Part shown: positions 1,925 through 34,655 of the stretch, in pieces | How the letters are laid out: every line of letters starts with the position of its first letter | Numbering within the stretch: the stretch's first letter is position 1 | Virus record (IMG/VR): IMGVR_UViG_3300042473_001265 | Coordinates: 248,001-312,000 of that record | Direction: 5' to 3' (one strand) | DNA: 64,000 nucleotides | The notes under the pieces: generated by a model | Databases searched by the model: none | Seen by the model: only the letters and a program-made list of their open reading frames with translations | Told to the model about the DNA's origin: nothing | Program-made: the position numbers and the translations under genes

Positions 1925-2377
1925 ATGTGGCTCAGCCGTGTCACTAGTGATCTGGGAGCAATCCCAGATTTCATTGCTCACTTTGAGCAAGAACTCACTG
2001 CTGCACGCCGTGATTGCGCCATTGGCGGCATGGTTGAACGAAATATCTCAGCACTGCCGGGCATTACAGAACATAGATTTAATCAGCTTCAAGAAATTGA
2101 AGCAGTATTAAATCATCTCAACATACAGCTACGCAAGATTCGTCGAAAACATTTTCAAAAATATCTCGAAGCATATGCTAGAGCATTGACCAGCAGAGAT
2201 GCTGAAAAATATGTGGATGGCGAAGACGAAGTGATTGACTTTGAAACTATCATCAACGAAGTGGCCTACTTGAGAAATCGTTACTTGGGCATTATGAAAG
2301 CCATGGAAAGTAAAAACTTCATGCTGGGACATGTGGTAAGATTACGAGCTGCTGGGATGGAAGACATACAACTATGA
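1925..2377 (+). CDS. uvsY: UvsY-like recombination mediator
   Basis: 150 aa helical protein, 'RALTSRDAEKYVDGEDEV' and C-terminal 'VRLRAAGMED'; next to uvsX. Confidence 0.75.
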   Translation: MWLSRVTSDLGAIPDFIAHFEQELTAARRDCAIGGMVERNISALPGITEHRFNQLQEIEAVLNHLNIQLRKIRRKHFQKYLEAYARALTSRDAEKYVDGEDEVIDFETIINEVAYLRNRYLGIMKAMESKNFMLGHVVRLRAAGMEDIQL

Positions 2378-3132
2378 CATTTAGAAACGACCAAGAACGG
2401 CACGAACACAGTTTACAAACTCTCAACACATTGGCCGAGTATGATGACTTCATGGAAAGCATTGGTACACTGGTTGATCTTGGTTGTGGCAGCGGTATGG
2501 ATCTAGAATGGTGGGCAACTAGAACCACCAGAGAGGATGCGCCGCAACCGTTGAACATTCGTTGCACCGGAGTTGACATTGCCAACGCACCATCGATGTT
2601 TAAAAAATATCCAAATATCACGCATCAACTGATTGACTTTGAACAAGTCAACCGGCTACCAAAAAAGACAAAGTTTGATGTGCTGTGGTGTCACGATGCT
2701 TTTCAGTATTGCGTAAATCCACTAGAAACTCTAGGTAAATGGAACAGCATTGCCGAAGATGGCGCCATGTTGGTAATGGCAATTCCGCAGACCACCAACA
2801 TGGACATTCGCCAACTGTCGTTTGTGCAGCCCGCTGGATGCTATTATCATCACACAGTGGTCAGTTTGATTCACATGCTGGCAGTGAATGGGTGGGATTG
2901 CAATTCGGGCTTTTTTCTAAAGCGGCCAGACGATGATTTTATACATGTGATTGCCTACAAGAGTGCCCATGCTCCTATGCCATACAGCACTACCACATGG
3001 TATGAATTGGCAGAAAAGGATCTACTGCCAGAAACAGCAATGACCAGTATACAGCGCCACGGTATGATACGGCAACAAGACCTTGTGCTACAGTGGATTG
3101 ATAAAAGTTTATCCCGGATGGGGCAACAATAA
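2374..3132 (+). CDS. Class I SAM-dependent methyltransferase
   Basis: Motif I 'VDLGCGSG', acidic beta2 end 'TGVDI', 'FDVLWCHDAFQY'; ATGA overlap with uvsY. Confidence 0.85.
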   Translation: MTFRNDQERHEHSLQTLNTLAEYDDFMESIGTLVDLGCGSGMDLEWWATRTTREDAPQPLNIRCTGVDIANAPSMFKKYPNITHQLIDFEQVNRLPKKTKFDVLWCHDAFQYCVNPLETLGKWNSIAEDGAMLVMAIPQTTNMDIRQLSFVQPAGCYYHHTVVSLIHMLAVNGWDCNSGFFLKRPDDDFIHVIAYKSAHAPMPYSTTTWYELAEKDLLPETAMTSIQRHGMIRQQDLVLQWIDKSLSRMGQQ

Positions 3133-3951
3133 ACGGCCAAGCGGTAAACCAGAGGCAATTTCTTCTGTATACCATTCGGTATGTGCCAGCTGTTCCAGCC
3201 ATGCTGTACGATCTGGTCTGGCAGGATCGTTGATACGGGACAGATCTAAATTGCCCACTGGTGCAGCCAAACTGGTTGAATTGACAAACGCCGGAACACC
3301 AGCCAACACTGCTTGTGAGCCAGGTCCGCTGTTGTGATTGATCACAGCCCACGCAGTGGCCAAACACCGATCATAGTCAAAGTTATCATAGGTTCCCTGA
3401 ACCGGCGTGGGCATTTGTATAACACAACCTGGCACTGCACCTATACGCTGTCTTGGGTGTGGCCGTATAACAATGGGTCGATCTGTATATTCTCTAATCT
3501 TGCCAGCAGTTTCTGTCAGCCAGGCCACAGTGGGCGGTTGTCCAGCCCATTGTTCACTTTCTGAACGCTGTGCTGCAATGACAATATTGTATCCAGTGTT
3601 GGTCCAGGGCTTGGCTGTCAGTCGTAGGTTGGCTGCACGACCTGGTATCAACTCAGTGCCATAATAAGCAGTGCTGCCGGTTCCGTTCAATCCCAATTTC
3701 CATGTGCTGCCGCGCCGCAGCATGCCCACCTCGGCCACTATCACAGGCCTTCCGCTGTTTCTAAATGTTTGCCATATTTCACGATTGTGCTTCATGCGGC
3801 CGTGCCACAACTGACTCCAGATAACAGCAACATCTGCCGAACTGTCCATGTTGTTATGCTTGATACCCAGTTGGTCAAGACCTGTTCTAATGGCGTCAAA
3901 CACAGGCCCGCTGTTGAGTGCGCCATATTGGTCAAAAATACTTACTCTCAT
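3109..3951 (-). CDS. Putative GT-B glycosyltransferase (KpsS/capsule-biosynthesis-like), paralog of 7192-8100
   Basis: 'IVIRPHP', 'WAVINHNSGPGSQAVLAGVPAFV', 'PDRTAWLEQLA..W..EE..SG' shared with 7192-8100. Confidence 0.6.
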   Translation of the reverse strand: MRVSIFDQYGALNSGPVFDAIRTGLDQLGIKHNNMDSSADVAVIWSQLWHGRMKHNREIWQTFRNSGRPVIVAEVGMLRRGSTWKLGLNGTGSTAYYGTELIPGRAANLRLTAKPWTNTGYNIVIAAQRSESEQWAGQPPTVAWLTETAGKIREYTDRPIVIRPHPRQRIGAVPGCVIQMPTPVQGTYDNFDYDRCLATAWAVINHNSGPGSQAVLAGVPAFVNSTSLAAPVGNLDLSRINDPARPDRTAWLEQLAHTEWYTEEIASGLPLGRLLLPHPG

Positions 3952-3963
3952 AATATACCCGGT

Positions 3964-3969
3964 TAAATA
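3964..3969 (+). promoter_or_regulatory. TAAATA late-promoter-like motif
   Basis: TAAATA in the short divergent intergenic gap, followed by AAGGA SD and ATG 3993. Confidence 0.55.
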
Positions 3970-3992
3970 TACACTTAGTTATAAGGAAAACA

Positions 3993-4799
3993 ATGAGTCG
4001 TAAATTCTCTGTGGTCACCACATTCAACGCATCTGGCTACAAAAAATACGGCAAAAGAATGATCGAAACATTCCTGAACACATGGCCTGCAGAAGTTGAC
4101 TTGATAGTGTATGCTGAAGATTGCACTGTCGTTGAATCTGCACCCAACTTGCGTGTGTTAGATCTGCATCGGGACAGTCCAGAACTAGTGGCATTCAAAA
4201 CAAAATGGCGCGGTGTTCCCAAGGCCAATGGTGATGTGTCTGCTGACCCCACAAGAAACAACCGCAAAGACGCTGCCAAAGGATTCAAATGGAATGCTGT
4301 ACGCTTTGCTCACAAAGTATATGCTATATTTGCTGCTGCCCATGCTGCAACTGATTGGCTGATATGGATGGATGCTGACACTGTGTGTCATAGTCCTATC
4401 TCGATGGCGCAATTACACAATTTGTGTCCCGCCGCAGCTGACATTTGTTTCTTGGGTCGCAAAGGCAAATACACCGAATGCGGGTTGTATGCTATGAATC
4501 TGCGTTCTCCGGCCACATCAAAATTTCTCAAAGAGTTTCAGCGTGTGTACGACGATGCAGACAACGGAATATTCACCATGAAAGAATGGCACGACAGTTT
4601 TGTGTTTGATGTTGTGCGTAAATCAATGACGTTGGAACAACACGATTGGAGTAGCCATTTGATTTCGGGCGAAGGCCATCCGTTGATCAACAGTGAATGG
4701 GGTGCCTATCTAGATCACTTGAAAGGTGATCGCAAGTCATTGGGTCGTAGTAAATTAAGCGATTTAAAAATTAAAAGAACAGAGGCGTATTGGCAATGA
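3993..4799 (+). CDS. GT-A fold glycosyltransferase/nucleotide-diphospho-sugar transferase-like protein
   Basis: 'RFAHKVYAI' followed by 'LIWMDADT' DxD motif; inside the glycan locus. Confidence 0.7.
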   Translation: MSRKFSVVTTFNASGYKKYGKRMIETFLNTWPAEVDLIVYAEDCTVVESAPNLRVLDLHRDSPELVAFKTKWRGVPKANGDVSADPTRNNRKDAAKGFKWNAVRFAHKVYAIFAAAHAATDWLIWMDADTVCHSPISMAQLHNLCPAAADICFLGRKGKYTECGLYAMNLRSPATSKFLKEFQRVYDDADNGIFTMKEWHDSFVFDVVRKSMTLEQHDWSSHLISGEGHPLINSEWGAYLDHLKGDRKSLGRSKLSDLKIKRTEAYWQ

Positions 4800-5476
4800 A
4801 AAGCTACATCATTTGTTTAAGTAATATTCCTGCAAGTTTGAATAGTGGCCTTCGTTTACAAAAAGAACTGTCTAATTTTAAAATAGAAGCCGAATTGTTT
4901 GAAGGCTCTTACGGAGATCAAGCACTGATACAATATCAAAAAAATAATCGACAGTGCCATCCTTGGGGGTTTAAAGGACCCGATGTACCGTTTTTGGATC
5001 AGTGCAAGCAAGACCGCACAACTCCGGGCATAGTCGGATGTTTTGATAGTCATTACAGACTATGGAAACTTTGTGCAAACTCTGATCAACCCATTGTAAT
5101 ATGGGAAGACGATGCTCATGTAATTCGCCCGTACTACCCGGTTGAATGGACTGATGTTTTGATTCTGGCTAGTAGTCATACTAAGAAAATGGAAAAATAC
5201 AAGCATTATTTAGAATCTCCTACAGGTGATCCCACAGCTGAATACTATCAACGCAGCAGCCTTCCCGGCGCCGCCGGCTATGCAATAAAACCACATGCTG
5301 CACAGAAACTTGTAGATTTTTATCATCAATCATTCCTGCCGGCAGACAACGCAATAAATCAATACATAGTAAAAATTCAAATACATAATTACATGATGGG
5401 ACAGGCACAGGATAGAGAAAGAACACACGGTAGATCCAGCCTCATTAAAACTAAAATTTGGGATAAGGAAAATTAA
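4796..5476 (+). CDS. Glycosyltransferase family 25-like (LPS biosynthesis)
   Basis: 'YIICL', 'GIVGCFDSHYRLWK', 'IVIWEDDA', 'GAAGYAIKPHAAQKL', 'PADN'; start moved to ATGA overlap at 4796. Confidence 0.8.
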   Translation: MKSYIICLSNIPASLNSGLRLQKELSNFKIEAELFEGSYGDQALIQYQKNNRQCHPWGFKGPDVPFLDQCKQDRTTPGIVGCFDSHYRLWKLCANSDQPIVIWEDDAHVIRPYYPVEWTDVLILASSHTKKMEKYKHYLESPTGDPTAEYYQRSSLPGAAGYAIKPHAAQKLVDFYHQSFLPADNAINQYIVKIQIHNYMMGQAQDRERTHGRSSLIKTKIWDKEN

Positions 5477-5479
5477 TCA

Positions 5480-6025
5480 ATGTCATACAGTTTAAAAACA
5501 GGTAAATCAGAAACGCTTGCGTGGTTTCAAGAACACCATGAAAAAATTACAAAAATTGTTGACATTGGACCCGGGTCTGGTACCTACGTCAATCTCATTA
5601 AAGAACAACACAACTGCTGCAACTCTGCTTATTGGATTGGTATAGAAGTATGGGAGCCATACATAAAAAAATACAATCTAGAACAGCGATACGATCAAAT
5701 TATTAATCAAGATGTGCGTGAAGTAAATTGGGAAGCTCTGGGACCTGTTAGTGTTGTAATTGCCGGAGATGTACTGGAACATATCACAAAAGAACAGGCA
5801 ATGACATTGGTAGATAAAATTTTGTCAGTTTCGGATGTGTTGATTGCGAGCATTCCAATTGTACACATGCCGCAAGACGAACATGCATACGACAACCCTT
5901 ACGAGGCGCATGTAAAGGATGACTGGAGCCATGCAGAAGTGATGGACACCTGGTCCCATTATATAAAACATCATTACCTTAAAAGTAGAAAAAGTAAATT
6001 AGGTGTATACTGGATGAAAAAATGA
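5480..6025 (+). CDS. Class I SAM-dependent methyltransferase
   Basis: 'IVDIGPGSGTY', 'IGIEVW', 'GDVLEHI'. Confidence 0.85.
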   Translation: MSYSLKTGKSETLAWFQEHHEKITKIVDIGPGSGTYVNLIKEQHNCCNSAYWIGIEVWEPYIKKYNLEQRYDQIINQDVREVNWEALGPVSVVIAGDVLEHITKEQAMTLVDKILSVSDVLIASIPIVHMPQDEHAYDNPYEAHVKDDWSHAEVMDTWSHYIKHHYLKSRKSKLGVYWMKK

Positions 6026-6564
6026 AAACTATAACACAACTACGAGATGATTTTTTATCTTTAAAAATAACTCCAACTGATTGGTTAGGCGACAGTCCTA
6101 GCCGATTTGACACATACACAAAATACGCGGCCAAAGTTGACAGCATTGTAGAGTTTGGAGTGTACACTGGATTGAGTACTGCTGCATTCTTGGCTGGCAA
6201 TCCAAAAAAATTGCGTAGCTATGACATCACTGATGAAAATCTCACAGTGTTGGACAGACTTAACCAACATGCAACACAACATCAAATTGATTTTGAATTC
6301 ATCATAGGTGATAGTCTAGCCGTAGACATAGAACCAACTGACCTGTTGTTTATTGATACTGTGCATAAAAAAAAGCACACTGCTGCTGAACTGGCCCGAC
6401 ACAGTAACAAAGTTAAACGATATATTATTTTTCATGATACCACTGATTGGCCTGGTGTGTTTCAGGCGGCCTGTGATTTTTTGTCGGAAAATCACCAATG
6501 GCACATAGTTGAACATTGCAATCGTGGATCTGGATTACTGGTGCTTGAGAAATATTGTGATTAA
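6022..6564 (+). CDS. Class I SAM-dependent methyltransferase (Methyltransf_24-like)
   Basis: 'IVEFGVYTGLST', 'GDSL', 'DLLFIDTVH', 'IIFHDT'. Confidence 0.8.
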   Translation: MKTITQLRDDFLSLKITPTDWLGDSPSRFDTYTKYAAKVDSIVEFGVYTGLSTAAFLAGNPKKLRSYDITDENLTVLDRLNQHATQHQIDFEFIIGDSLAVDIEPTDLLFIDTVHKKKHTAAELARHSNKVKRYIIFHDTTDWPGVFQAACDFLSENHQWHIVEHCNRGSGLLVLEKYCD

Positions 6565-7195
6565 TGTTGTATGCGTACTGCGACACGGCGGCAAAGTAAA
6601 TTATGATGCAGAATGGGTTGCCAAACTGCAGAGAGCAGTGGCAAGAAACTTAACAGTGCCCCACCGCTTTGTGTGTCTGAGTGACTGTGAAGTTGCAGTT
6701 GACCGAATCCCGTTGGATGCAACTGGTACAGGATTTTGGGCAAAACTACAGTTGTTCAAGCCTGGGGTGTTTTCTGAACCTGTGCTGTATCTGGATCTTG
6801 ACACTGTAATTTGTTCAAACATAGATGAAATTGTTTCAGCTTGCCAATCCAAAACTTTTGTAATGTGGTATGAAGCAGACAAACACATTCACTCAAGTGC
6901 CATGATGTGGTGGCAAGGTGACCACAGTCACTTATGGGAAATATATCAATCTCGTCCATTGGACCACTGGAAATCTTTGTATGGCCAGGTGCCGCTGTAC
7001 GGTGATCAAGCACTGATAAGCCAGCATGTTGACCATGAATTATTCACTGATTTCTTACCTACTGAGTGGATGCAGATTGCACATAAACGACAGTTAGACA
7101 ATCTTGAATTGGTTAAAATATTACATTTTAGAAAAAATAATCAAAAACCCAGCACTATGCTGCATCATCCATTGGTGGCGCAACACTGGATTTAG
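6557..7195 (+). CDS. GT-A (GT8-like) glycosyltransferase, paralog of 11285-12016
   Basis: 'FWAKLQLF', 'LYLDLDTVI', 'SSAMMWW', 'GDQALIS'; GTG start at 6557 overlaps the upstream stop. Confidence 0.75.
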   Translation: MINVVCVLRHGGKVNYDAEWVAKLQRAVARNLTVPHRFVCLSDCEVAVDRIPLDATGTGFWAKLQLFKPGVFSEPVLYLDLDTVICSNIDEIVSACQSKTFVMWYEADKHIHSSAMMWWQGDHSHLWEIYQSRPLDHWKSLYGQVPLYGDQALISQHVDHELFTDFLPTEWMQIAHKRQLDNLELVKILHFRKNNQKPSTMLHHPLVAQHWI

Positions 7196-8100
7196 ATATA
7201 TTTTTTAATGTGTTGCCAGGCTGCGCCTGACACGACTTCTGTGTGATTCCAATGGCACATGGCAATGCGTTCTATCCATGCTTGTCTATCTGGCATAGCG
7301 GGATTTTCTATCAATCTTAGATCTGTGTTGGCCACAGCAGCAGCTTGACTACGATCTGGATCAGTGACAAAAATTGGATATCCTTCTATTACAGATCCTA
7401 CAGTGGGACTGGAATTGTGATTTACCACAGCCCAACAGTTTCGGAGATCGTCTATTAGTGTAGAATCAGGCCGAGACAATGATACATTACGAAAATGATC
7501 AACGCTACCGATGTGTTGTCTTGCGGCTTTGTCTCCTGGATGCGGTCGCAGTACAATAGGGCGATCTGTTGCTTGTTGCAGTTTGGCAATGGTTTTTGTA
7601 GCCCAATCAACTATGTCGTATGTGCCCATGCTCCAACCGCCGTTGCGCTGCAAGCACACCAATATATGTTTGCCATTTTGTCGCCAATCCTTCAACCCAA
7701 TGCCAGTGTTGCGACTTATAGACTGCCAGCGAGCAGGATCTGGATTATCCCAGAAATATGTCCCTGTGTTCGGGAAAACTCCGTCGAAACTGTATCTAGA
7801 ATACTCATTTTTGCCACGATAGTTAAACAAGTTGCTATCTACTACAAGTAATCTATTGTTATTTTTTTTCTGATATTCGTGTACTGCTGATCTAAATAGA
7901 TTGTGGGTACCTTGTTTTCCGGTGGCATGCGGCCATCCTTGTATAAATGCTACTTCGCAGTTGCTCAGAACTGGGGATGAACTAACTACGCCAGTGTCTC
8001 CGTATGCGTTTACTCCACTGACAAATCTTGTTAACAATTCAAATTTATGCTGACTTTTTTTACTCGGCGGAATAGTTGATAGATATGCTATTAATTTCAT
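7192..8100 (-). CDS. Putative GT-B glycosyltransferase (KpsS/capsule-biosynthesis-like)
   Basis: 'IVLRPHP', 'WAVVNHNSSPTVGSVIEGYPIFV', 'PDRQAWIERIA'; paralog of 3109-3951. Confidence 0.6.
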   Translation of the reverse strand: MKLIAYLSTIPPSKKSQHKFELLTRFVSGVNAYGDTGVVSSSPVLSNCEVAFIQGWPHATGKQGTHNLFRSAVHEYQKKNNNRLLVVDSNLFNYRGKNEYSRYSFDGVFPNTGTYFWDNPDPARWQSISRNTGIGLKDWRQNGKHILVCLQRNGGWSMGTYDIVDWATKTIAKLQQATDRPIVLRPHPGDKAARQHIGSVDHFRNVSLSRPDSTLIDDLRNCWAVVNHNSSPTVGSVIEGYPIFVTDPDRSQAAAVANTDLRLIENPAMPDRQAWIERIAMCHWNHTEVVSGAAWQHIKKYI

Positions 8101-9008
8101 TTAATCTTTTCCCAAAATTCCGTAGTAGCAAGCCGACATTCTTCTAGAGCATGGTCACTTATTATAACATCATCAACTACATCTTTCCAGTCACCATCGC
8201 GCTTTAACATATACGGAACATGTTTCATATTTAAAAATTTACTACTCCATGCGTCGACTACAATAACTTTCTTACCCAACAGCGCACCCCAATAAGCGCC
8301 ATGATAACTATTGGTTAAAATTATGTTAGCACTGCCCAGGAGTTCAATAGACTGATCTATGTTGCTTCCAGAATTCACAAACCGCGGTATACTGTCATTG
8401 CCGAAGTTTTTAATCAACTGTTTTTTATGTTCAAAAAATATAACATCATTTTTAATTGCATATTTTTCATCAAATGCCGGGTGCATACAACTGGCACACG
8501 GCACCCATGGCTGATTTTGATTCCAGTCGCGGATACCAACTTCGTCAAACTTCATGAGCCAATCTGGATATTCAACTGCCGCATCGCCACGTTTATCCAA
8601 CGGACCGTTATGCCCTGCACCCCATATGTATCGTTTGGCCTGTGCAGGCGCAAGTTGCATCATATATTTTTTAATAAACTCTCTATGGGCAAACATAAAT
8701 TCCTTATGTGATTTTTTATTTGCCGGATCTCTCAGATCCCATTTATGTTTTTGTATTTGAATTAATTGATATAAATCAGCTGACGGCAATACCGATTCAA
8801 TGGCATCATTAAAAAACTCGTTAGCAATCAAGCCACCCCCACCTACAACCATCGGCAGTGTAGGATCGTATGCAGTATTTTTTATATTAGTAATATCAAC
8901 TACTTGATACTCTTCTGGTTCGAGGAAATACTGCAACGGATTACTGGCAAGGTCGCCTACATTGTTGCGGTCGGCACGATGTACTACTGTAAATTTAAGT
9001 TTGGTCAT
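8097..9008 (-). CDS. Polysaccharide pyruvyl transferase-like protein
   Basis: 'NNVGD', 'VVGGGGLI', 'WGAG', 'VGIRD', 'ILTNSYHGAYWGALLGK'; start taken at Met50 of the ORF track (9008). Confidence 0.65.
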   Translation of the reverse strand: MTKLKFTVVHRADRNNVGDLASNPLQYFLEPEEYQVVDITNIKNTAYDPTLPMVVGGGGLIANEFFNDAIESVLPSADLYQLIQIQKHKWDLRDPANKKSHKEFMFAHREFIKKYMMQLAPAQAKRYIWGAGHNGPLDKRGDAAVEYPDWLMKFDEVGIRDWNQNQPWVPCASCMHPAFDEKYAIKNDVIFFEHKKQLIKNFGNDSIPRFVNSGSNIDQSIELLGSANIILTNSYHGAYWGALLGKKVIVVDAWSSKFLNMKHVPYMLKRDGDWKDVVDDVIISDHALEECRLATTEFWEKIK

Positions 9009-9693
9009 TTGATAAGTGTTGTTGGCAATATTCTGTATGAATTCTTTCTTGGTGCCATTCATTGGCAAAGCTGCCTTTATCGGCAAACTCGTGAAAACAC
9101 GGCGTGCCCAAGGTATAATGTACCAGTTTTGCATTGGGGTTTGCGTCGTATTCAACGTCTAACCAATTCCATTCTTTGGGCAATTCGCCAATGCGATCAT
9201 CGTCTATCCACGAGAAGCGGTGGAGCTCGCTACCAGTGGCACGCTGGACGAACTTGGGAGTAAGAGCCCGGTTAGGAAAGCTATTACAATTCCACAGTAT
9301 AACACTACTCCAATTTTTACGAGGATAGTCTTCATTCTTTGCTCCTAGATATTTTACAGGCATACGAGTTTTGTAGTCATGCTTGACCACTTGCACATCC
9401 AGGCCAGGATTGCGTAGAGCCCAGAGTTCCGCAATGTCGCTGCGCACAATCATATCACCATCTATAAAGATAGCATGGCCAGTGTACTCCATCAAGTGCG
9501 GCACAAGAAAGCGACTGTAGATAAACTGATTGCTACCATCAGTGTGCGTTTCTGTGTAGTCGGTAAACAAGTTAAGGGCCAGTGGAATAATTGCTACAGG
9601 CTTGCTTGCATGCCTAATGATTGAGTTAACACAGGTGTGGTAAGCTATTGCTTCTCTGGGATCGTATCCGACAAAAATTGGTATTGGTTTCAT
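8995..9693 (-). CDS. GT-A (GT8-like) glycosyltransferase
   Basis: 'IFVGYDPRE', 'FIYSRFLVP', 'AIFIDGDM', 'YPRKNWSSVILWN', 'LVHYTLGTP'. Confidence 0.85.
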   Translation of the reverse strand: MKPIPIFVGYDPREAIAYHTCVNSIIRHASKPVAIIPLALNLFTDYTETHTDGSNQFIYSRFLVPHLMEYTGHAIFIDGDMIVRSDIAELWALRNPGLDVQVVKHDYKTRMPVKYLGAKNEDYPRKNWSSVILWNCNSFPNRALTPKFVQRATGSELHRFSWIDDDRIGELPKEWNWLDVEYDANPNAKLVHYTLGTPCFHEFADKGSFANEWHQERIHTEYCQQHLSNDQT

Positions 9694-10481
9694 TGTATGT
9701 TTTCAAAGTATTTTTTGTATTTAACTGGTAGATAGTCGTCTGGTAACAATTTTTTAGTTTTACCGACCAATACCCAAATTTTTGCATCAGGGCCTTTGCT
9801 AGAAAATGATTGTAGAGATCCTAAATTTAAAAAATCTTGATTTTGATAAATGCATTCGTTTTCTAAAATTTCAGTTAAGCACACCTGATCAAGTCCTGTA
9901 AAATTAGCTTTTTCTATTTTGTTTTCTATTTTTTCAACTTTTAAAAAATCTATATTTTTTATTTTTTCTTCGTATAGATCAATGACTTTTGGAAGAAAAT
10001 TTTTATATGATGATGTTAAAAATAAAAAATAAGCAGCAGTTCTTTCCCAAGCGGTGTTTTTTTGTTTTTTATAAGTTATTCCTATATTAACTGATTCAGG
10101 AAAGCTAATTAAAGAATTAAAGATAATATCAGCATCGACGATTTTAATGCAAGTTACAGAAGTGTGTTGAAATATATAATTAGAAAGATAAAATCTAGCC
10201 ATGTAATAATAACTTTTTAATAGATAAAAATTTAAATTTGACGTTTCAAAGTACTCAGTAGACCACGATAGCGGAATCTGTAATTTATCTATTATTGCTT
10301 TTAAAGTCAACACTGAATCCAGTGATGGATTAATTAAGTGTACATGCACTGGTTGATTGGTGTCGTTACACGATAAAATATTATATATTCCGTATTTTTT
10401 AAAATAATTATCGTCGCAAGAAAAAACAACTAAATTGTCACTCTTTGGAATTGAATCAAAAAGAACATTTTTAAAAAACAA
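9690..10481 (-). CDS. Very AT-rich hypothetical protein, possible glycosyltransferase
   Basis: 'IVDADII' DxD and 'GLDQVCL'; start uncertain (TTG at 10481 or 10496). Confidence 0.55.
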   Translation of the reverse strand: MFFKNVLFDSIPKSDNLVVFSCDDNYFKKYGIYNILSCNDTNQPVHVHLINPSLDSVLTLKAIIDKLQIPLSWSTEYFETSNLNFYLLKSYYYMARFYLSNYIFQHTSVTCIKIVDADIIFNSLISFPESVNIGITYKKQKNTAWERTAAYFLFLTSSYKNFLPKVIDLYEEKIKNIDFLKVEKIENKIEKANFTGLDQVCLTEILENECIYQNQDFLNLGSLQSFSSKGPDAKIWVLVGKTKKLLPDDYLPVKYKKYFENIQ

Positions 10482-10482
10482 A

Positions 10483-11247
10483 TTATTTTCTCTCAATATC
10501 TTCTTCGACACAGTCACTGCCGTACTGGATCTCAATCAGTTTCAGCGGTTTATCAGTTTCGTTACACAGCTGATGCCATTCACGACATTCAATAAAAGTG
10601 TGTTCATGCACATCAAGCTGGCACTTGACGTCACGGTCTGTGCTGGAGTCTTCCAGTGTGTACACTGTGGCTGTGCCTTCGGCCACAAACCAAAACTCCT
10701 GTCGTAGATCATGGCGTTGCATGCTTAAACAGGTCTGAGGCATCACAGTGAGCTCTTTGAGCTTGGTGTTGGCACCCACTTCGTGCAGCACACGATAGTA
10801 TCCCCAGGCTCGTTCGGTCCGGGGTGCTTTCCATTCTTGCAATATCCAACTGCTAGAATTCTTTTTATCTTCACCGCCTATGCCAAACACAAATGATAAA
10901 TTAGCATCTATCACATCCATTTCTGGAATGTTATCTCGGGTTCTGTCCCCGCCATTGGCAAATATCAGTTCGGCATCGGGGTAATGTGCTCTTGCTTGTT
11001 GAATAAAATGTTTTGCTGATCCGTCATTGTCGTCAAAGGTATAAACTTCGTCAACCATTGATAAATTATTAACAATGCAGAGTCGTTCGTTCCAGGGCAT
11101 AAAGGCTGCACCTTTTTTACGAACCAGCCACTCATCGCTATTGAGGCCAACAATCAACATGTCGCCTAGAGTTTTTGCAGCTTTAAAGTAGGCAATATGT
11201 CCCGAATGCACAGGATCAAATCCACCGGTTACTAATACTATTTTCAT
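10483..11247 (-). CDS. Cytidylyltransferase-like (HIGH) domain fused to a cupin (mannose-6-phosphate isomerase-like) domain
   Basis: 'VTGGFDPVHSGH', 'LIVGLNSDEWL', 'FANGGDR'; C-terminal 'ERAWGYY..L', 'SMQRH..R.EFW', 'EIQYG..C.EEDIER'; start at Met33 of the ORF track. Confidence 0.85.
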   Translation of the reverse strand: MKIVLVTGGFDPVHSGHIAYFKAAKTLGDMLIVGLNSDEWLVRKKGAAFMPWNERLCIVNNLSMVDEVYTFDDNDGSAKHFIQQARAHYPDAELIFANGGDRTRDNIPEMDVIDANLSFVFGIGGEDKKNSSSWILQEWKAPRTERAWGYYRVLHEVGANTKLKELTVMPQTCLSMQRHDLRQEFWFVAEGTATVYTLEDSSTDRDVKCQLDVHEHTFIECREWHQLCNETDKPLKLIEIQYGSDCVEEDIERK

Positions 11248-11252
11248 AAAGA

Positions 11253-11280
11253 TATTTATCGTTATATACGCACATAAATA
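11253..11280. promoter_or_regulatory. Divergent pair of TAAATA late-promoter-like motifs
   Basis: Minus-strand TAAATA 11258-11253 lies 5 nt before ATG 11247; plus-strand TAAATA 11275-11280 lies 4 nt before ATG 11285; no SD on either side. Confidence 0.6.
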
Positions 11281-11284
11281 TAGA

Positions 11285-12016
11285 ATGACCTCACTGATCG
11301 CCAACACACAGCCACTGGACTGTGCTTGTGTTATACACAGCAACGGATACGACTGGACCTATGTGGATCGACTGTACAGCATGTTATGCAGACATTTGAC
11401 CCGCCCAGTCCGACTACATGTTTATACCGAAGCAACAAGACCAGTTCCGGATCACATGGTCAAGCACTGTTTAGAAGATTGGGGATTTGCTGGGCCCAAA
11501 AAAAGTTGGTGGTATAAACTACAGTTGTTCAACACCCAGCATCATTCAGGCCCCATGTTGTATTTTGATTTAGATGTGGTCATTGCCAACAACATAGACT
11601 GGATCTGGCAATTGAATTTGCGACATTTTTGGTCAATACGGGACTTCAAATATCTGTGGAAGCACAACTGGACCGGATCAAATACCAGTGTGATGTGGTG
11701 GGACACTGCACAATACCAGCATGTGTGGAACACAGTGGTAGATCAGGACATAGACTTCTTTGTTCGTAAATACCGCGGAGATCAGGATTTTGTGTCAGAT
11801 GTAATACCCACGGCACATCGTCGATTTTTTCATTCTGAATGGGTAAAAAGCTGGAAATGGGAATGTGTCGACGGTGGATTTGACTTTGCTCGTAAAAAGC
11901 ACCGCACACCTGGTACAGGAACAACCTTAACCACTGATACCAGTATATTGGTATTTCATGGCCAACCTAAACCGCATGAAATAACAGATGCCACAGTGAT
12001 ATCACACTGGCAGTGA
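11285..12016 (+). CDS. GT-A (GT8-like) glycosyltransferase
   Basis: 'WWYKLQLF', 'LYFDLDVVI', 'NTSVMWW', 'GDQDFVS', 'VFHGQPKP'. Confidence 0.8.
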   Translation: MTSLIANTQPLDCACVIHSNGYDWTYVDRLYSMLCRHLTRPVRLHVYTEATRPVPDHMVKHCLEDWGFAGPKKSWWYKLQLFNTQHHSGPMLYFDLDVVIANNIDWIWQLNLRHFWSIRDFKYLWKHNWTGSNTSVMWWDTAQYQHVWNTVVDQDIDFFVRKYRGDQDFVSDVIPTAHRRFFHSEWVKSWKWECVDGGFDFARKKHRTPGTGTTLTTDTSILVFHGQPKPHEITDATVISHWQ

Positions 12017-12022
12017 TAAATA
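12017..12022 (+). promoter_or_regulatory. TAAATA late-promoter-like motif
   Basis: TAAATA, then AGGAG SD, then ATG 12043. Confidence 0.6.
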
Positions 12023-12042
12023 AACATAACAGGAGACCTTAG

Positions 12043-12738
12043 ATGGCCAATAGAACAATACAATTTTGCGGATACGCATACGGTGCAGTGCCGTTACAAT
12101 TAAACGCACACATCAATGGACAAACAGTTTTTAGCGGGGCAGTCGATACATTAACTGAAGATATTCCTGCGTTGCCAATTGATATGACCAATGCACCGGT
12201 ATTGTTTTCAGTGACCGAGTCAGCACTGTTTCCAACCAGTTTCAGCGGTTCGTATCCAATGACAATTTCTGTTGCAACTGGATCCGGCATAATACTTGGC
12301 TTTGTAAAAAGCAACTACATGTCAACAGCAACAAATATGGTAGAATTCAGTGGTTCCATTAGCGACACAACATTGAATGTAAGTAGCGTGACGTCTGGAG
12401 AAATTGTACCCGGCCAGATCATACATAACACTATTATAACCAAAGGAACAACAATTGTATCGGGCAGCGGGTCAACTTGGCAAGTCTCTGAGAGTCAGTT
12501 AGCAGGTGAAGCAACTATAAATGGTGAAATTCTTTTCCCAGGCACCGTGGACACATTTAAAATGTGTTACACTGGAGTTCCTACAAATTCAGACGGCACA
12601 CAAGATTCCCGCAGTAGTGTACAAATTAACGGCGTACCTCAGAGTCGAGAAATACCGCCATCCGGTCAGTGGACATGGTCAGTCGAGGCCGGCAGCACAA
12701 TTGAATACAATTTCAACATTAGTGCGGGCAGTGAGTAA
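12043..12738 (+). CDS. Probable virion structural protein (Ser/Thr/Gly-rich, beta-rich)
   Basis: Late motif, strong SD and its own terminator; composition typical of tail/baseplate accessory proteins. Confidence 0.55.
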   Translation: MANRTIQFCGYAYGAVPLQLNAHINGQTVFSGAVDTLTEDIPALPIDMTNAPVLFSVTESALFPTSFSGSYPMTISVATGSGIILGFVKSNYMSTATNMVEFSGSISDTTLNVSSVTSGEIVPGQIIHNTIITKGTTIVSGSGSTWQVSESQLAGEATINGEILFPGTVDTFKMCYTGVPTNSDGTQDSRSSVQINGVPQSREIPPSGQWTWSVEAGSTIEYNFNISAGSE

Positions 12739-12758
12739 CCCTTGCACTGTACAACATC

Positions 12759-12786
12759 AAAAACCCTGCTTTTAGCAGGGTTTTTT
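12759..12786 (+). terminator. Rho-independent terminator
   Basis: AAAAA-CCCTGCT-TTT-AGCAGGG-TTTTTT. Confidence 0.9.
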
Positions 12787-12790
12787 GTGG

Positions 12791-12819
12791 TTGACCATTA
12801 ATTGCCCAAATGCTATAAT
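12791..12819 (+). promoter_or_regulatory. Sigma70-like early promoter (repeat copy 1)
   Basis: TTGACC-17 bp-TATAAT with TG extended -10. Confidence 0.85.
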
Positions 12820-12849
12820 ACACACATAGCAAAGCAAAAAGGAATCACA

Positions 12850-12987
12850 ATGCAGTACACATTGATTGCAGGTAATGGTAAAGTATACATTTTTTTTCTA
12901 AAATCTGTAGCTGACTTGTACCAGCAATGCTATGGTGGTGTTGTAATTACGCCACAAGTGCTTGCAGAACAAACAGTTGACCATTAA
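12850..12987 (+). CDS. Small early hypothetical protein (45 aa)
   Basis: AAGGA SD before ATG 12850; sits between two promoter repeats. Confidence 0.7.
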   Translation: MQYTLIAGNGKVYIFFLKSVADLYQQCYGGVVITPQVLAEQTVDH

Positions 12988-13005
12988 TTGCTATTCTGCT
13001 ATAAT
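12977..13005 (+). promoter_or_regulatory. Sigma70-like early promoter (repeat copy 2)
   Basis: TTGACC-17 bp-TATAAT; spacer begins ATTAATTG as in copy 1. Confidence 0.85.
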
Positions 13006-13040
13006 TAATACTTAAACAACGCACACCAAAGGAGCCAACC

Positions 13041-33835: not shown

Positions 33836-34655
33836 AGTATTCGAAAGTTACTTTGGTAATACCATTACCTTTGAATCAATTTCCAAGCGCCATGCACATG
33901 CCATGTTGGGCCGAGTACGCAGCTTGATAAGCGAGCACCGTGCCACCACTTCCTATCATGGCAGTGAAAAAAGCCCAGCCTACTTAAAGTTGGTAATGAT
34001 GGAACAAGTGCTGACCAAGAAACTTCGTGAAGAATTTCCAAGCACTGATGGCACTGCTGCGGTTGATCCAGCCAAGACCAAACAGGCCCTGGCCAAAATT
34101 CAAGATCCCAAACTCAAAGCTGCCATGACCAAAAGCGCAGCCGGACAGACACTTTCACCAGACGAACAAAAACTTGTGCAAGGTGCAGCACTGCAAGCAG
34201 TGGCCGCAGAAAGCCGTCGTAGAACTGGTCGCCGTTTGAGTGAAAGCGAAGTGCAACAAGCTCAGGTTATCCTGGCCAGTCAAGACATGGTTGACCAAGT
34301 ACAGAAGATGATTGAACAGGTCACTTCGTTACAATTTAAAGATTTGCCTGCGTTGGTAGATCAGATTCGCAATGAAATTGGCTACGAGCAAGCAACAAAA
34401 TTCAATGCCGACGCAACTGCTGCACTGGGCGGCATGGTTCAAAACTTGCAGGGCTCCAAAACACAATTGGAAGCTGCAATGGGCACAGTCACTGGTCAAG
34501 CTCCAGTAATACCCGGCGGCGATGTAGCTGCTGAATTACCAGTTGATCCAATGGCTGATCCAATGGCTGCTGCGCCAGCAGATGATTTAGACATCGATGT
34601 TGATGCAGACATTGAAGAACCAGTTTCGGCTGGTCTAGGTCGCGATCGCAGATAA
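33786..34655 (+). CDS. Helical protein with acidic tail, putative prohead core/scaffold-like protein
   Basis: TAAATA 33757-62, AAGGA SD, start MKLQDL; internal L-x-E sites; D/E/A/P-rich C-terminus. Confidence 0.55.
   Translation: MKLQDLAVLPQTKQIAKVFESYFGNTITFESISKRHAHAMLGRVRSLISEHRATTSYHGSEKSPAYLKLVMMEQVLTKKLREEFPSTDGTAAVDPAKTKQALAKIQDPKLKAAMTKSAAGQTLSPDEQKLVQGAALQAVAAESRRRTGRRLSESEVQQAQVILASQDMVDQVQKMIEQVTSLQFKDLPALVDQIRNEIGYEQATKFNADATAALGGMVQNLQGSKTQLEAAMGTVTGQAPVIPGGDVAAELPVDPMADPMAAAPADDLDIDVDADIEEPVSAGLGRDRR

What the first reader, a model, noticed from the sequence alone, without database searches (positions are those of the whole stretch)
2374..12016. ~10 kb phage glycan-building and decorating locus
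Thirteen genes: 3 methyltransferases, about 5 GT-A glycosyltransferases, a GT25, two GT-B-like paralogs, a pyruvyltransferase-like enzyme and a cytidylyltransferase-cupin fusion. Several sit behind TAAATA late motifs, implying late expression. Seen: motifs and layout. Inference: an assembly line for a methylated/pyruvylated glycan on the virion or host surface (receptor masking or superinfection exclusion) rather than simple DNA glucosylation.
Basis: partly seen in the sequence, partly recalled or inferred. Interest (0 to 1): 0.6.

Follow-up and report, generated by a model that had tools for sequence, protein, structure and literature searches.

The report
Late-expressed glycan-building island in a jumbo phage
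A 340-kb uncultivated T4-related jumbo phage carries a 10-kb, late-transcribed cluster of 13 soluble sugar-building and sugar-decorating enzymes. The same island recurs, highly reshuffled, in hundreds of related environmental phages, so a phage-made decorated glycan, most likely on the virus particle, seems widespread but remains unstudied.

Summary
Window 2374-12016 has 13 genes: three SAM methyltransferases (A, E, F), six GT-A glycosyltransferases (C, D=GT25, G, J=GT8, K, M), two GT-B-like paralogs (B, H), a pyruvyltransferase-family protein (I) and a nucleotidyltransferase plus PMI-cupin fusion (L).

TAAATA is the phage's late-promoter core. It is 8.8-fold enriched upstream of genes, precedes portal, sheath and baseplate genes, and a gp55-like sigma is present. 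It sits before C, J, L and M. The copy 11 nt before L is kept in 62-63 of 77-78 related contigs. uvsX, uvsY and the helicase never carry it.

The island fills a variable slot between uvsY and the helicase. L, J, B/H and C are its conserved core. The methyltransferases, GT25, pyruvyltransferase and K come and go.

B/H model best on retaining beta-Kdo transferases (KpsC/WbbB). They keep the HP motif but lack the Asp nucleophile. The family has no Pfam model, at least 4,900 clusters and 2-6 copies per locus.

No protein has a membrane segment. The genome has no hydroxymethylase or T4 beta-GT homolog.

Best reading: a late, cytoplasmic, lipid-carrier-independent glycosylation line for a decorated glycan, most likely on virion proteins. 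The acceptor is inferred. Host LPS-core remodelling is the main rival; DNA glycosylation is disfavoured.

The parts
2374..3132 (+). A: class I SAM methyltransferase. Its start overlaps the uvsY stop (ATGA), so it is translationally coupled to uvsY. It has no late motif. It is a variable accessory gene.
   Evidence: Pfam Methyltransf_23/31/11 above cut-off. Overlap seen. Present in only 3 of 80 related loci.
3109..3951 (-). B: KpsC/WbbB-like GT-B protein of the B subtype (QR...HPR). It is a paralog of H and diverges from C.
   Evidence: 38% identity to H over 170 aa. Member of alignment A1 with Q and HP motifs.
3964..3969 (+). TAAATA late-promoter core, 29 nt before the C start. It heads the C-D-E-F-G operon.
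   Evidence: genome-wide motif statistics
3993..4799 (+). C: GT-A-type nucleotide-sugar transferase with an invariant DAD motif. It is a conserved core gene.
   Evidence: Weak Pfam GT2 hit. Invariant D127/D129 in 18 homologs. Nearest named Atlas clusters are GT8/Nucleotid_trans. Homolog present in Pelagibacter phage Mosig.
4796..5476 (+). D: GT25-family glycosyltransferase. Its ATG at 4796 overlaps the C stop. It is a variable accessory gene.
   Evidence: PF01755, 56.7 bits. Start checked. Present in 8-9 related ORFs.
5480..6025 (+). E: small SAM methyltransferase. Variable accessory gene.
   Evidence: Four methyltransferase Pfam families at about 1e-3 and phrog_4752. GPGSG motif.
6022..6564 (+). 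F: Methyltransf_24 (TylF/O-methyltransferase-like). Variable accessory gene.
   Evidence: PF13578, 28.8 bits, above cut-off.
6557..7195 (+). G: PmgQ-like GT-A glycosyltransferase, a paralog of M. The ORF opens at 6509; the likely start is GTG at 6557.
   Evidence: phrog_1962, E 6.7e-25. Paralogy to M. Start candidates.
7192..8100 (-). H: KpsC/WbbB-like GT-B protein of the H subtype (QR...HPG). It is the last gene of the L-K-J-I-H operon.
   Evidence: AF2 pLDDT 94.6. Foldseek E 5.5e-9 to KpsC. VIA Z 15.1, rmsd 3.8 over 250 residues.
8097..9008 (-). I: polysaccharide pyruvyltransferase-family protein of 303 aa, starting at M50 of the long ORF. Variable accessory gene.
   Evidence: PF04230, E 8e-4, below cut-off. 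More than 1,179 homologs, all about 303 aa, and about 40% of those listed carry PF04230. NxGD and SYHG motifs seen.
8995..9693 (-). J: GT8-family retaining GT-A glycosyltransferase. It is a conserved core gene that normally follows L directly.
   Evidence: PF01501, 31.7 bits. phrog_28018, 2e-38. PDB WbbM, 6.5e-6. Present in 68-69 related ORFs. Fused to a B/H-type domain in some relatives.
9718..9723 (-). TAAATA late-promoter core, 30 nt before the J start and inside the 3' end of K.
9690..10481 (-). K: retaining-type GT-A glycosyltransferase (GT6/GT8/glycogenin-like fold) with an invariant DxD motif. It is an insertion specific to this phage and its closest kin.
   Evidence: No Pfam, PHROG or PDB sequence hit. 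26 metagenomic homologs. AF2 pLDDT 89.7. Foldseek E about 1e-7 to alpha-1,3-GalT, glycogenin and UGGT. Start.
10483..11247 (-). L: HIGH-motif nucleotidyltransferase (RfaE domain II/TagD-like) fused to a type II PMI-like cupin. It is the first gene of the late operon and is present in every related locus.
   Evidence: PF01467, 45.5 bits, and PF01050, 69.6 bits. TIGR02199, 3e-20. PDB ECT, TagD and HldC. More than 598 IMG/VR relatives.
11253..11258 (-). TAAATA late-promoter core, 11 nt before the L ATG. It is conserved at that spacing across the lineage.
   Evidence: 63 of 78 relatives by one count and 62 of 77 by a second (56 exactly at -11).
11275..11280 (+). TAAATA late-promoter core, 10 nt before the M ATG, in the 37-bp divergent L/M spacer.
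11285..12016 (+). M: PmgQ-like GT-A glycosyltransferase with a DLD motif. It is a semi-conserved core gene.
   Evidence: phrog_1962, 1.8e-21. Homologs P1 PmgQ, P7 HdmD and Mosig_183. Profile hit to the Skp1 alpha-galactosyltransferase 6mw5, E 0.004.
12017..12738 (+). N, with its own TAAATA (12017-12022) and an AGGAGA ribosome-binding site. It is a 231-aa Ser/Thr/Gly-rich late protein of unknown function, lying just outside the finding. It may be a virion protein; whether it belongs to the system is unknown.
   Evidence: No family hit. Only weak, low-confidence structural neighbours, all viral structural proteins. Motif.
12764..12786 (+). Intrinsic terminator hairpin (CCCTGCT-TTT-AGCAGGG followed by T6) that closes the M-N late unit. 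A TTGACC...TGCTATAAT sigma-70-type promoter follows it.
   Evidence: Sequence read; promoter.

Best explanation
This is a late-transcribed, cytoplasmic, lipid-carrier-independent glycosylation island in a T4-related jumbo phage.

Shown:
- Thirteen soluble enzymes sit in five transcription units. The two large operons, C-D-E-F-G and L-K-J-I-H, and gene M are each headed by the phage's late-promoter core TAAATA.
- The island occupies a variable slot between uvsY and the replicative helicase.
- It has a conserved core (L, J, several B/H paralogs, C and often M) and a changing set of decorating enzymes (methyltransferases, GT25, pyruvyltransferase and K; in relatives also FkbM methyltransferases, a radical-SAM enzyme and NTP-transferase/HAD fusions).

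Inferred:
- L supplies an activated mannose- or heptose-type sugar (or sugar phosphate). The PMI-like cupin would make the manno-configured sugar phosphate, and the RfaE-II/TagD-like domain would nucleotidylate it.
- J (GT8) and the other GT-A enzymes add hexoses from host UDP-sugars.
- The B/H paralogs share a conserved donor-side domain with the His-Pro motif typical of transferases that release a nucleoside monophosphate. Their acceptor-side domains differ. Each would therefore add the same special residue at a different position.
- The methyltransferases and the pyruvyltransferase then cap the glycan.
- The whole unit is switched on together with head, tail and baseplate genes, and nothing in it can export a polymer. 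The most likely acceptor is therefore a phage structural protein, giving a virion glycan coat whose composition differs between related phages.
For: Late promoter:
- TAAATA is the most enriched upstream hexamer, 54 copies against 6.1 expected.
- It precedes the baseplate wedge, portal, tail sheath, head-decoration-like and tail-fibre genes.
- A T4 gp55-like sigma is encoded.
- The motif before L is kept in 62 of 77 relatives. By contrast 0 of 44 uvsX, 0 of 65 uvsY, 0 of 12 helicase and 0 of 12 O genes have it.
- The replication neighbours carry TGCTATAAT-type promoters instead.

Soluble enzymes:
- No 19-residue hydrophobic segment occurs in any corrected protein.

Family and fold assignments.

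Core versus variable genes, and the 2-6 B/H copies per locus.

Functional coupling of J and B/H:
- They are adjacent in Pelagibacter phage Mosig and in Caulobacter phage CcrColossus.
- They are fused into one roughly 550-aa protein in some relatives (hhalign probability 100%, E 8.5e-40).

Late or structural context elsewhere:
- In CcrColossus the pair lies between a tail gene and the lysis cassette.
- The G/M family includes P1 PmgQ, which its record annotates as a 'putative morphogenetic function' protein.

Donor and acceptor sides of B/H:
- 20 of 165 columns in the C-domain are at least 80% conserved, against 2 of 134 in the N-domain.

Against a DNA target:
- No PF00303 and no T4 beta-GT homolog.
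Against: - No glycan, acceptor or expression timing has been observed. The phage is known only from metagenomes.
- Late expression fits a virion target but does not prove one.
- Every family matched (GT8, GT25, RfaE-II, KpsC/WbbB) is best known from LPS, LOS or capsule assembly on the cytoplasmic face of the inner membrane. That process also needs no membrane-spanning enzyme.
- Gene A is coupled to uvsY and has no late motif. No promoter for B was identified.
- The donor made by L is a guess. The kinase, mutase and phosphatase steps would have to come from the host.
- The phage encodes no CMP-Kdo synthetase.
- I scores below the Pfam cut-off.
Confidence: 0.45

Rival explanations
1. Host-envelope remodelling. 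The soluble enzymes act at the cytoplasmic face of the inner membrane on lipid A-core, or on a lipid-linked primer such as the KpsS/KpsC acceptor. Host MsbA or capsule exporters then carry the altered glycolipid outward. This would mask receptors on the infected cell and its debris, so that progeny are not lost by re-adsorption, or other phages are excluded.
For: - All the matched families are LPS, LOS or capsule enzymes: GT8 (WbbM, RfaI/J type), GT25, RfaE domain II, and KpsC/WbbB.
- Such enzymes lack membrane segments, as seen here.
- The nucleotidyltransferase domain of L is 54% identical to stand-alone genes of T4-like cyanophages S-SSM7 and P-TIM68, whose records name them after an LPS heptose-pathway enzyme. 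From my own knowledge, cyanophage 'LPS' gene sets are hypothesised to alter the cell surface.
- Hypervariable gene content resembles O-antigen loci.
Against: - Late-promoter control, shared with virion genes, leaves little time to renew the outer membrane and is a poor design for superinfection exclusion.
- There is no transporter, ligase or lipid-linked initiator in the locus.
- The same island occurs in phages of very different hosts (SAR11 phage Mosig, Caulobacter phages). Their core LPS or envelope acceptors differ, which is easier to explain if the acceptor is phage-encoded.
Confidence: 0.25
2. DNA, or nucleotide-pool, hypermodification. The transferases build a decorated oligosaccharide on a modified base of the phage genome to evade restriction and other defences, as T-even glucosylation and arabinosylation do.
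For: - The island lies beside the recombination and replication genes uvsX/uvsY and the helicase.
- In T4, beta-gt lies beside uvsX, separated only by segA.
- Phage GT-A and GT-B enzymes are known to hypermodify DNA with diverse glycans, including multi-sugar chains (bioRxiv 10.1101/2023.12.21.572611).
- Hypervariability would suit an arms race with restriction systems.
Against: - The 98%-complete genome has no ThyA-family hydroxymethylase.
- There is no Tet/JBP hit, although the control for that search was silent.
- There is no T4 beta-GT sequence homolog.
- T4 beta-GT is not among the listed structural matches of H.
- DNA-modifying transferases must act during replication, whereas this operon carries the late promoter that uvsX, uvsY and the helicase lack.
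- The cited study finds that DNA-modifying GT pathways are usually clustered with 5mYOX or ThyS genes. None is nearby here.
Confidence: 0.1
3. Modification of another cytoplasmic target late in infection. Candidates are host proteins or a small molecule, for example a GT8/glycogenin-like protein glycosylation that shuts down a host function, or synthesis of a soluble glycoconjugate.
For: - GT8- and GT77-like folds include cytoplasmic protein glycosyltransferases (glycogenin, Skp1 alpha-GalT).
- All the enzymes are soluble.
Against: - A conserved core of four or five transferase families plus decorating enzymes, with 2-6 paralogs of one transferase, points to a multi-residue glycan rather than a single inactivating sugar.
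- No precedent was found in the literature searches.
Confidence: 0.1

Closest known systems
Glycan cassette of Pelagibacter phage Mosig (Mosig_183-191), and the J+H pair of Caulobacter phages (CcrColossus gp128-129)
   Same: Mosig carries homologs of C (34% identity), J (45%), H (29%, two copies) and M (26%), clustered with two methyltransferases and a sulfotransferase. CcrColossus has H-like and J-like genes side by side, with other glycosyltransferases, between a tail gene and the lysis cassette.
   Different: Those phages lack the L fusion next to the cassette and have one or two B/H copies. They are unrelated lineages (a Kyanoviridae myophage and a giant siphophage), and their cassettes are uncharacterised and annotated mostly 'hypothetical'.
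Retaining beta-Kdo glycosyltransferases KpsC (GT107), WbbB (GT99) and KrkA
   Same: These are the best structural matches of H: VIA Z 15.1-12.9 over about 250 residues, against about 11 for generic GT-B enzymes. H shares the reduced GT-B architecture, the Gln after the first C-domain strand, and the His-Pro motif (motifs as described in PMC10148158). Several modules with different linkage specificity act in series, as in the two-module KpsC.
   Different: The Asp nucleophile of QxxxD is replaced by Gly, Ser or Pro in all 52 aligned members. One subfamily lacks both Q and HP. Sequence identity is 10-14%. The phage encodes no CMP-Kdo synthetase. The donor and acceptor are unknown.
Virion glycosylation systems of mycobacteriophages (Freeman et al. 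2023, as cited in PMC12619734) and of giant viruses (chlorovirus and Mimivirus glycan machineries, from my own knowledge)
   Same: The virus encodes soluble glycosyltransferases together with sugar methyltransferases, and in Mimivirus a pyruvyltransferase. They build a virus-specific decorated glycan on structural proteins without the host's lipid-carrier pathways. Tetraselmis virus 1 has several KpsC-like 'capsule polysaccharide biosynthesis' paralogs that match the H model at TM 0.70-0.78.
   Different: No sequence relationship to the mycobacteriophage enzymes was tested. In those systems the glycan on the virion was shown experimentally; here nothing has been measured.
Bifunctional PMI-GMP enzymes (AlgA/XanB/ManC type) and HldE/RfaE domain II
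   Same: The C-terminal cupin of L scores 69.6 bits on the type II PMI C-terminal model. By eye it keeps the family's C-terminal sequence signature (the signature is from my own knowledge). Its N-terminal domain scores best on heptose-1-phosphate adenylyltransferase (TIGR02199, 3e-20). As in PMI-GMP, an isomerase and a nucleotidyltransferase of one sugar pathway are fused.
   Different: The nucleotidyltransferase is of the HIGH-motif (TagD/ECT/RfaE-II) class, not the GT-A-like NTP_transferase class, and it sits N-terminal to the cupin. All equivalog cut-offs are missed by a wide margin. About 50% identical cellular versions exist in SAR86 and other proteobacterial genomes.
T4 alpha- and beta-glucosyltransferases (DNA glucosylation)
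   Same: These are phage-encoded sugar transferases of a T4-related phage. In T4, beta-gt lies beside uvsX, separated only by segA.
   Different: T4 uses single enzymes acting on hydroxymethylcytosine. Here there is no hydroxymethylase and no sequence homolog, the fold matches are different, and the promoters are late rather than early.

Membership tests
Retaining beta-Kdo glycosyltransferases (GT99/GT107) - for B and H | Modified GT-B fold shared by KpsC, WbbB and KrkA | tested here: met
   H model pLDDT 94.6. KpsC, WbbB and KrkA fill VIA ranks 1-15 at Z 15.1-12.9, well above other GT-B enzymes at Z 11 or less. Foldseek E 5.5e-9.
Retaining beta-Kdo glycosyltransferases (GT99/GT107) - for B and H | His-Pro motif (the His protonates the CMP leaving group) | tested here: met
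   R185-x-H187-P188 after the second C-domain strand in B, H and 42 of 52 family members. It is absent in a third subfamily of 10.
Retaining beta-Kdo glycosyltransferases (GT99/GT107) - for B and H | QxxxD motif with the Asp nucleophile that forms the covalent Kdo adduct (PMC10148158) | tested here: not met
   Q151 is kept in 42 of 52 members, but the Q+4 position is Gly (23), Ser (20) or Pro (9) and never Asp. The correspondence rests on strand and motif register, not on a residue-level structural superposition.
Retaining beta-Kdo glycosyltransferases (GT99/GT107) - for B and H | CMP-beta-Kdo as donor | not testable with these tools
   The phage has no CMP-Kdo synthetase (PF02348 absent, control positive). 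A Gram-negative host could supply CMP-Kdo.
Polysaccharide pyruvyltransferase, PF04230 - for I | Score above the Pfam gathering threshold over the domain | tested here: inconclusive
   I scores 19.8 bits against a 25.3 cut-off, over the C-terminal 42 residues only. About 40% of the 120 listed homologs (53-98% identical) carry a precomputed PF04230 hit. There was no PDB sequence hit and the protein was not folded.
GT8 - for J | Pfam GT8 above cut-off, with a DxD motif | tested here: met
   31.7 bits against 24.3. FIDGDMIV motif. Match to the GT8 domain of WbbM, E 6.5e-6.
GT25 - for D | Pfam GT25 above cut-off | tested here: met
   56.7 bits against 24.
Type II PMI cupin plus HIGH-motif nucleotidyltransferase - for L | Both domains above Pfam cut-offs in one polypeptide, and an HxGH motif | tested here: met
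   PF01050, 69.6 bits against 23.6. PF01467, 45.5 bits against 21. HSGH lies at residues 14-17 of the corrected protein. Enzymatic activities were not tested.
T4-type late transcription unit | Late promoter element upstream, shared with virion genes, and a phage gp55-like sigma | tested here: met
   The TAAATA core is enriched 8.8-fold upstream of genes and precedes virion genes. A gp55 homolog is present, E 8.7e-7. The exact T4 octamer TATAAATA is not enriched, so this is a variant of the T4 consensus. Transcription starts were not measured.
T-even-type DNA glycosylation system | Hydroxymethyl-pyrimidine synthesis (ThyA-family hydroxymethylase or 5mYOX) in the genome | tested here: not met
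   PF00303 is absent with a positive control. PF12851 is absent but its control was silent.
Wzx/Wzy- or ABC-transporter-dependent surface polysaccharide locus | Membrane-embedded initiating transferase, flippase or polymerase, or an exporter | tested here: not met
   No hydrophobic 19-mer above 1.6 in any of the 13 proteins or the 12 flanking genes examined, apart from a spurious N-terminal extension of L and single borderline windows in E and the helicase. No such Pfam family was found.

The most novel reading that the evidence does not exclude
The island encodes a new viral glycosylation chemistry. L would make an unusual nucleotide-activated manno-sugar. One option is an ADP- or CDP-linked mannose or heptose. 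Another is a CDP-6-hexose, formed directly from the isomerase product, as with the CDP-6-fructose and CDP-6-glucitol donors of Campylobacter capsules (from my own knowledge). The B/H proteins would be a previously unnamed, virus-dominated transferase family. The family has at least 4,900 clusters at 90% identity, a KpsC-like fold and the HP motif, lacks the Asp nucleophile and carries an invariant acidic residue in the N-domain. Its members would transfer that residue, or its phosphate ester, by single displacement at several positions. The result would be a lineage-specific, methylated and pyruvylated coat on jumbo-phage virions.
Probability: 0.2. Interest if true: 0.75.

Novelty: new variant of a known kind. 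Interest (0 to 1): 0.55.

Why it matters
Virus-made glycans are well documented for giant eukaryotic viruses and, recently, for mycobacteriophages. They are almost unexplored in the jumbo phages that are common in lakes and oceans.

This locus shows several things:
- A large, uncultivated clade of T4-related jumbo phages keeps a late-expressed glycosylation operon at a fixed genomic position. More than 598 IMG/VR contigs carry the L gene alone.
- The decorating genes of that operon turn over rapidly. This is the signature of a surface under diversifying selection.
- The island contains two components worth biochemical study. One is a nucleotidyltransferase-PMI fusion, which also occurs in SAR86 cells. 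The other is a Pfam-less, KpsC-like transferase family with thousands of members.

If the glycan sits on the virion, it would affect adsorption, stability, grazing or immune-like recognition of abundant aquatic phages. It would also give a handle (lectins, antibodies) for sorting them.

Tried and rejected
- Megablast of the whole locus against 50,697 phage records found nothing. The closest cultured relatives, Sinorhizobium phage Phosso and Agrobacterium phage Atu_ph07, share only flanking genes. In Phosso the uvsY-helicase slot holds three unrelated small genes.
- NCBIfam named none of the proteins except weak hits for A and L.
- PDB sequence searches gave nothing usable for K, I and the C profile.
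- The B/H profile gave only E 0.2 to WbbB by sequence. The relationship became clear only from the fold.
- The exact T4 octamer TATAAATA is not enriched. The shorter core is the real signal.
- N stays unexplained. It has no family hit, and its Atlas model has low confidence with weak viral-structural neighbours.
- The 'moraphage' paper (PMC12619734) describes another jumbo-phage lineage and was set aside.
- Literature searches for phage Kdo-transferase-like genes and for the Mosig cassette found no treatment of this module.
- The 'atlas' fold library was unavailable.
- The Tet/JBP search is uninformative because its control did not ring.
- I considered a classical O-antigen or capsule export locus and rejected it, because no membrane components are present.

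Full report
**Context**

The window is bases 248001-312000 of a single 340,172-bp virus record that CheckV rates 98% complete. Its UvsX is 64-66% identical to those of Sinorhizobium phage Phosso, Agrobacterium phage Atu_ph07, a 349-kb Vibrio phage and the CBB/GAP32 group of jumbo myophages. The genome has a T4 gp23-type capsid gene, a UvsY and a gp55-like late sigma. It is therefore a T4-related jumbo phage known only from metagenomes. No cultured phage shares the locus at the DNA level.

**The observation**

Thirteen ORFs fill 2374-12016.

Family scans give:
- A: Methyltransf_23/31/11, above the cut-offs.
- E: four methyltransferase families at about 1e-3, plus a GPGSG motif.
- F: Methyltransf_24, above the cut-off.
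- D: GT25, 56.7 bits.
- J: GT8, 31.7 bits.
- L: CTP_transf_like plus MannoseP_isomer (PMI cupin).
- C: weak GT2 hit.
- I: weak PS_pyruv_trans hit.

Further evidence:
- G and M both hit phrog_1962 'glycosyltransferase'. They are paralogs and are related to P1 PmgQ and P7 HdmD.
- B and H are paralogs without any family hit.
- K had no hit anywhere. With 26 metagenomic homologs it folds at pLDDT 89.7 into a GT-A. That model matches alpha-1,3-galactosyltransferase, glycogenin and UGGT at E about 1e-7, and K has an invariant DxD motif.
- C has an invariant DAD motif, and its nearest named neighbours are viral nucleotide-diphospho-sugar transferases.
- I has more than 1,179 homologs of the same 303-aa length, and about 40% of those listed carry PF04230.

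Several starts need correcting:

| Gene | Corrected start |
|---|---|
| L | 11247 |
| K | 10481 |
| I | 9008 |
| D | 4796 |
| G | about 6557 |

With these starts the genes form tightly coupled operons. C-D-E-F-G lies on the + strand and L-K-J-I-H on the - strand, with ATGA-type overlaps. B and M stand alone, and A is coupled to uvsY.

**Late promoters**

I made a crude gene call of the whole genome (407 genes). In the 60 nt upstream of starts, TAAATA is the most enriched hexamer, with 54 copies against 6.1 expected. Shine-Dalgarno words and TGCTATAAT follow it.

Its distance to the start codon is bimodal, at -9 to -13 and at -21 to -32. Genes behind it include the baseplate wedge, portal, tail sheath, a head-decoration or fibre-like protein, virion structural proteins and tail-fibre-like genes. 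The capsid operon has one at -69.

In the locus the motif sits at -29 of C, -30 of J, -11 of L and -10 of M. It also sits at -26 of the next gene, N. The neighbouring replication genes O, S and T carry TGCTATAAT-type -10 elements instead.

Across related contigs:
- The motif precedes L in 62 of 77 cases, 56 of them exactly at -11.
- It precedes none of 44 uvsX, 34 g02, 65 uvsY, 12 O and 12 helicase genes.

That comparison is the strongest evidence that the island is a late transcription unit set among non-late genes.

**Comparative anatomy**

The L protein alone has more than 598 relatives in IMG/VR. I fetched 80 loci. The usual order is uvsX-(g02)-uvsY | L-J-[B/H]n-...-C-B-M | helicase or O.

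- Conserved: L (all loci), J, B/H, C and often M.
- Sporadic: A, D, E, F, G, I, K and N.

Relatives carry other decorators in the same place. These include extra class I methyltransferases, an FkbM methyltransferase, a radical-SAM enzyme and an NTP_transferase-HAD fusion. A K homolog elsewhere lies next to FkbM methyltransferases, an NTP_transferase-HAD fusion, a cupin and a carbamoyltransferase.

In Phosso the same slot holds three unrelated small genes. In this phage the L...H block is inverted relative to most relatives.

Homologs of C, J, H and M also occur together in Pelagibacter phage Mosig, with two methyltransferases and a sulfotransferase. H-like and J-like genes sit side by side between a tail gene and the lysis cassette in Caulobacter phage CcrColossus.

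In some relatives J is fused to a B/H-type domain. The cassette is therefore a mobile, functionally linked module.

L also exists as a cellular gene, about 50% identical, in a housekeeping context in SAR86 single-cell genomes. Several 'MAG' hits are mis-binned phage contigs with the same synteny.

**The B/H family**

An alignment of 52 members gave an AF2 model of H with pLDDT 94.6 and two Rossmann-like domains.

- Foldseek and VIA-align both rank the retaining beta-Kdo transferases KpsC, WbbB and KrkA first. VIA gives Z 15.1-12.9 with rmsd 3.7-4.8 over about 250 residues, against Z 11 or less for ordinary GT-B enzymes.
- Among viral models, the best named matches are several 'capsule polysaccharide biosynthesis' paralogs of Tetraselmis virus 1.
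- According to PMC10148158, these enzymes are defined by an HP motif, a QxxxD motif whose Asp is the covalent nucleophile, and a Glu base in the N-domain.

In the phage family:
- Q151 and H187-P188 are kept in 42 of 52 members.
- The Q+4 position is never Asp.
- A third subfamily lacks both motifs.
- An acidic residue (D88 of H) is present in all 52 members.
- The C-domain has 20 columns at 80% conservation or more. The N-domain has 2.

So B and H resemble CMP-sugar transferases of this fold, but they fail the defining nucleophile test. I do not file them as beta-Kdo transferases. I infer a common donor, different acceptors or linkages, and probably single-displacement chemistry.

The family is large. 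At least 4,929 clusters score E 0.001 or better, all unnamed and without Pfam domains, and several lie on contigs of 200-360 kb.

**What is absent**

- No protein of the locus or its flanks has a membrane segment.
- No initiating phosphoglycosyltransferase, flippase, polymerase or exporter family was hit.
- The genome has no ThyA-family hydroxymethylase, no CMP-Kdo synthetase and no T4 beta-GT homolog.
- No glycosyltransferase paralogs occur outside this locus.

**Mechanism**

Shown: a late-promoter-driven set of soluble enzymes able to activate a sugar, transfer sugars with several specificities, methylate and possibly pyruvylate.

Inferred:
- L couples a PMI-like isomerase to an RfaE-II/TagD-like nucleotidyltransferase and supplies a special manno-type donor.
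- J and the other GT-A enzymes use common UDP-sugars.
- The B/H paralogs add the special residue.
- The accessory enzymes cap the chain.

The unit is co-regulated with virion genes and cannot export anything. It also travels between phages whose hosts have very different envelopes. I therefore favour a phage structural protein as acceptor (confidence 0.45).

The main rival is cytoplasmic-face remodelling of LPS core or a lipid primer (0.25), which the family names would suggest. DNA hypermodification (0.1) is weakened by the missing hydroxymethyl pathway and by the late promoters. The T4 precedent of beta-gt next to uvsX is noted. A different cytoplasmic target remains possible (0.1).

**Novelty**

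Phage- and virus-encoded glycan machineries are a known kind. New here are:
- the fixed, late-expressed, hypervariable island in a very large uncultivated jumbo-phage clade;
- the HIGH-type nucleotidyltransferase-PMI fusion;
- the expanded KpsC-like family that lacks the nucleophile.

I found no paper describing this module.

Noticed in passing
whole genome (G000); in the window e.g. 11253-11258 (-), 11275-11280 (+), 21372 (-), 21827 (+), 54466 (+): The late motif TAAATA falls into two spacing classes. 22 of the 54 upstream occurrences lie only 9-13 nt before the start codon, with no room for a Shine-Dalgarno leader. The rest lie 21-32 nt upstream, and some of those, such as N, have AGGAG between motif and start. 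The short class suggests leaderless or near-leaderless late mRNAs, including those for L and M.
   Followed up: partly
window 12739-13040: After gene N there is a clean intrinsic terminator (12764-12786), immediately followed by a TTGACC-N17-TGCTATAAT sigma-70-type promoter. This marks a sharp switch from late to early/middle transcription units. The same TGCTATAAT element precedes O (13041) and T (18854), and a TTGTATAAT variant precedes S (17356).
   Followed up: partly
window 12043-12738: Gene N is a 231-aa Ser/Thr/Gly/Asn-rich protein with its own late promoter and a strong ribosome-binding site. It has no family hit and a homolog in only one other related phage locus (L005, 74%). It could be a variable virion protein next to the glycan genes, or even an acceptor, but nothing supports this yet.
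   Followed up: partly
G000:C1:181149-181460 (outside the window): A homolog of T4 gp55, the late sigma factor (33% identity, E 8.7e-7), lies in an open frame of 346 aa. That is almost twice the length of T4 gp55 (185 aa).
   Followed up: no
L101 6001-6777 and L100, L102-L106, L108, L110: The nucleotidyltransferase-PMI-cupin fusion also occurs, at about 50% identity, as an apparently cellular gene. In the one such locus whose neighbours were examined (L101, a SAR86 contig) it lies between a MatE transporter and housekeeping genes (RibF, MurJ, a CoA-transferase) and away from any phage genes. The other hits are SAR86, Porticoccaceae and Rhodobacteraceae genomes, which show L without the rest of the island within 6 kb.
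   Followed up: partly
L097-L099, L107, L109: Contigs deposited in MAGs labelled Haliscomenobacter, Crocinitomicaceae and Neomarinimicrobiota carry the full phage synteny (uvsX-uvsY-L-J-H-C-B-helicase). They are probably jumbo-phage contigs binned with bacteria. They give no reliable host assignment.
   Followed up: partly
L004 8281-9534, L055 8284-9534, L057 5966-7222: Several relatives have an extra ORF of about 417 aa inserted between g02 and uvsY. It is absent from this phage and may be a mobile element or homing endonuclease.
   Followed up: no
L052 11575-13239, L076 3267-4958 and similar: In a subset of relatives the GT8-like J protein is about 550 aa long. Its C-terminal 250 residues are a B/H-family domain of the HP-less subtype. 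This is a natural fusion of two core components.
   Followed up: yes
G000:C1:7761-7979 and 34269-34484 (outside the window): Two further cytidylyltransferase-like segments elsewhere in the genome resemble the N-terminal domain of L (36-41% identity over about 72 aa). They may be NMN or pantetheine adenylyltransferase-type genes.
   Followed up: no
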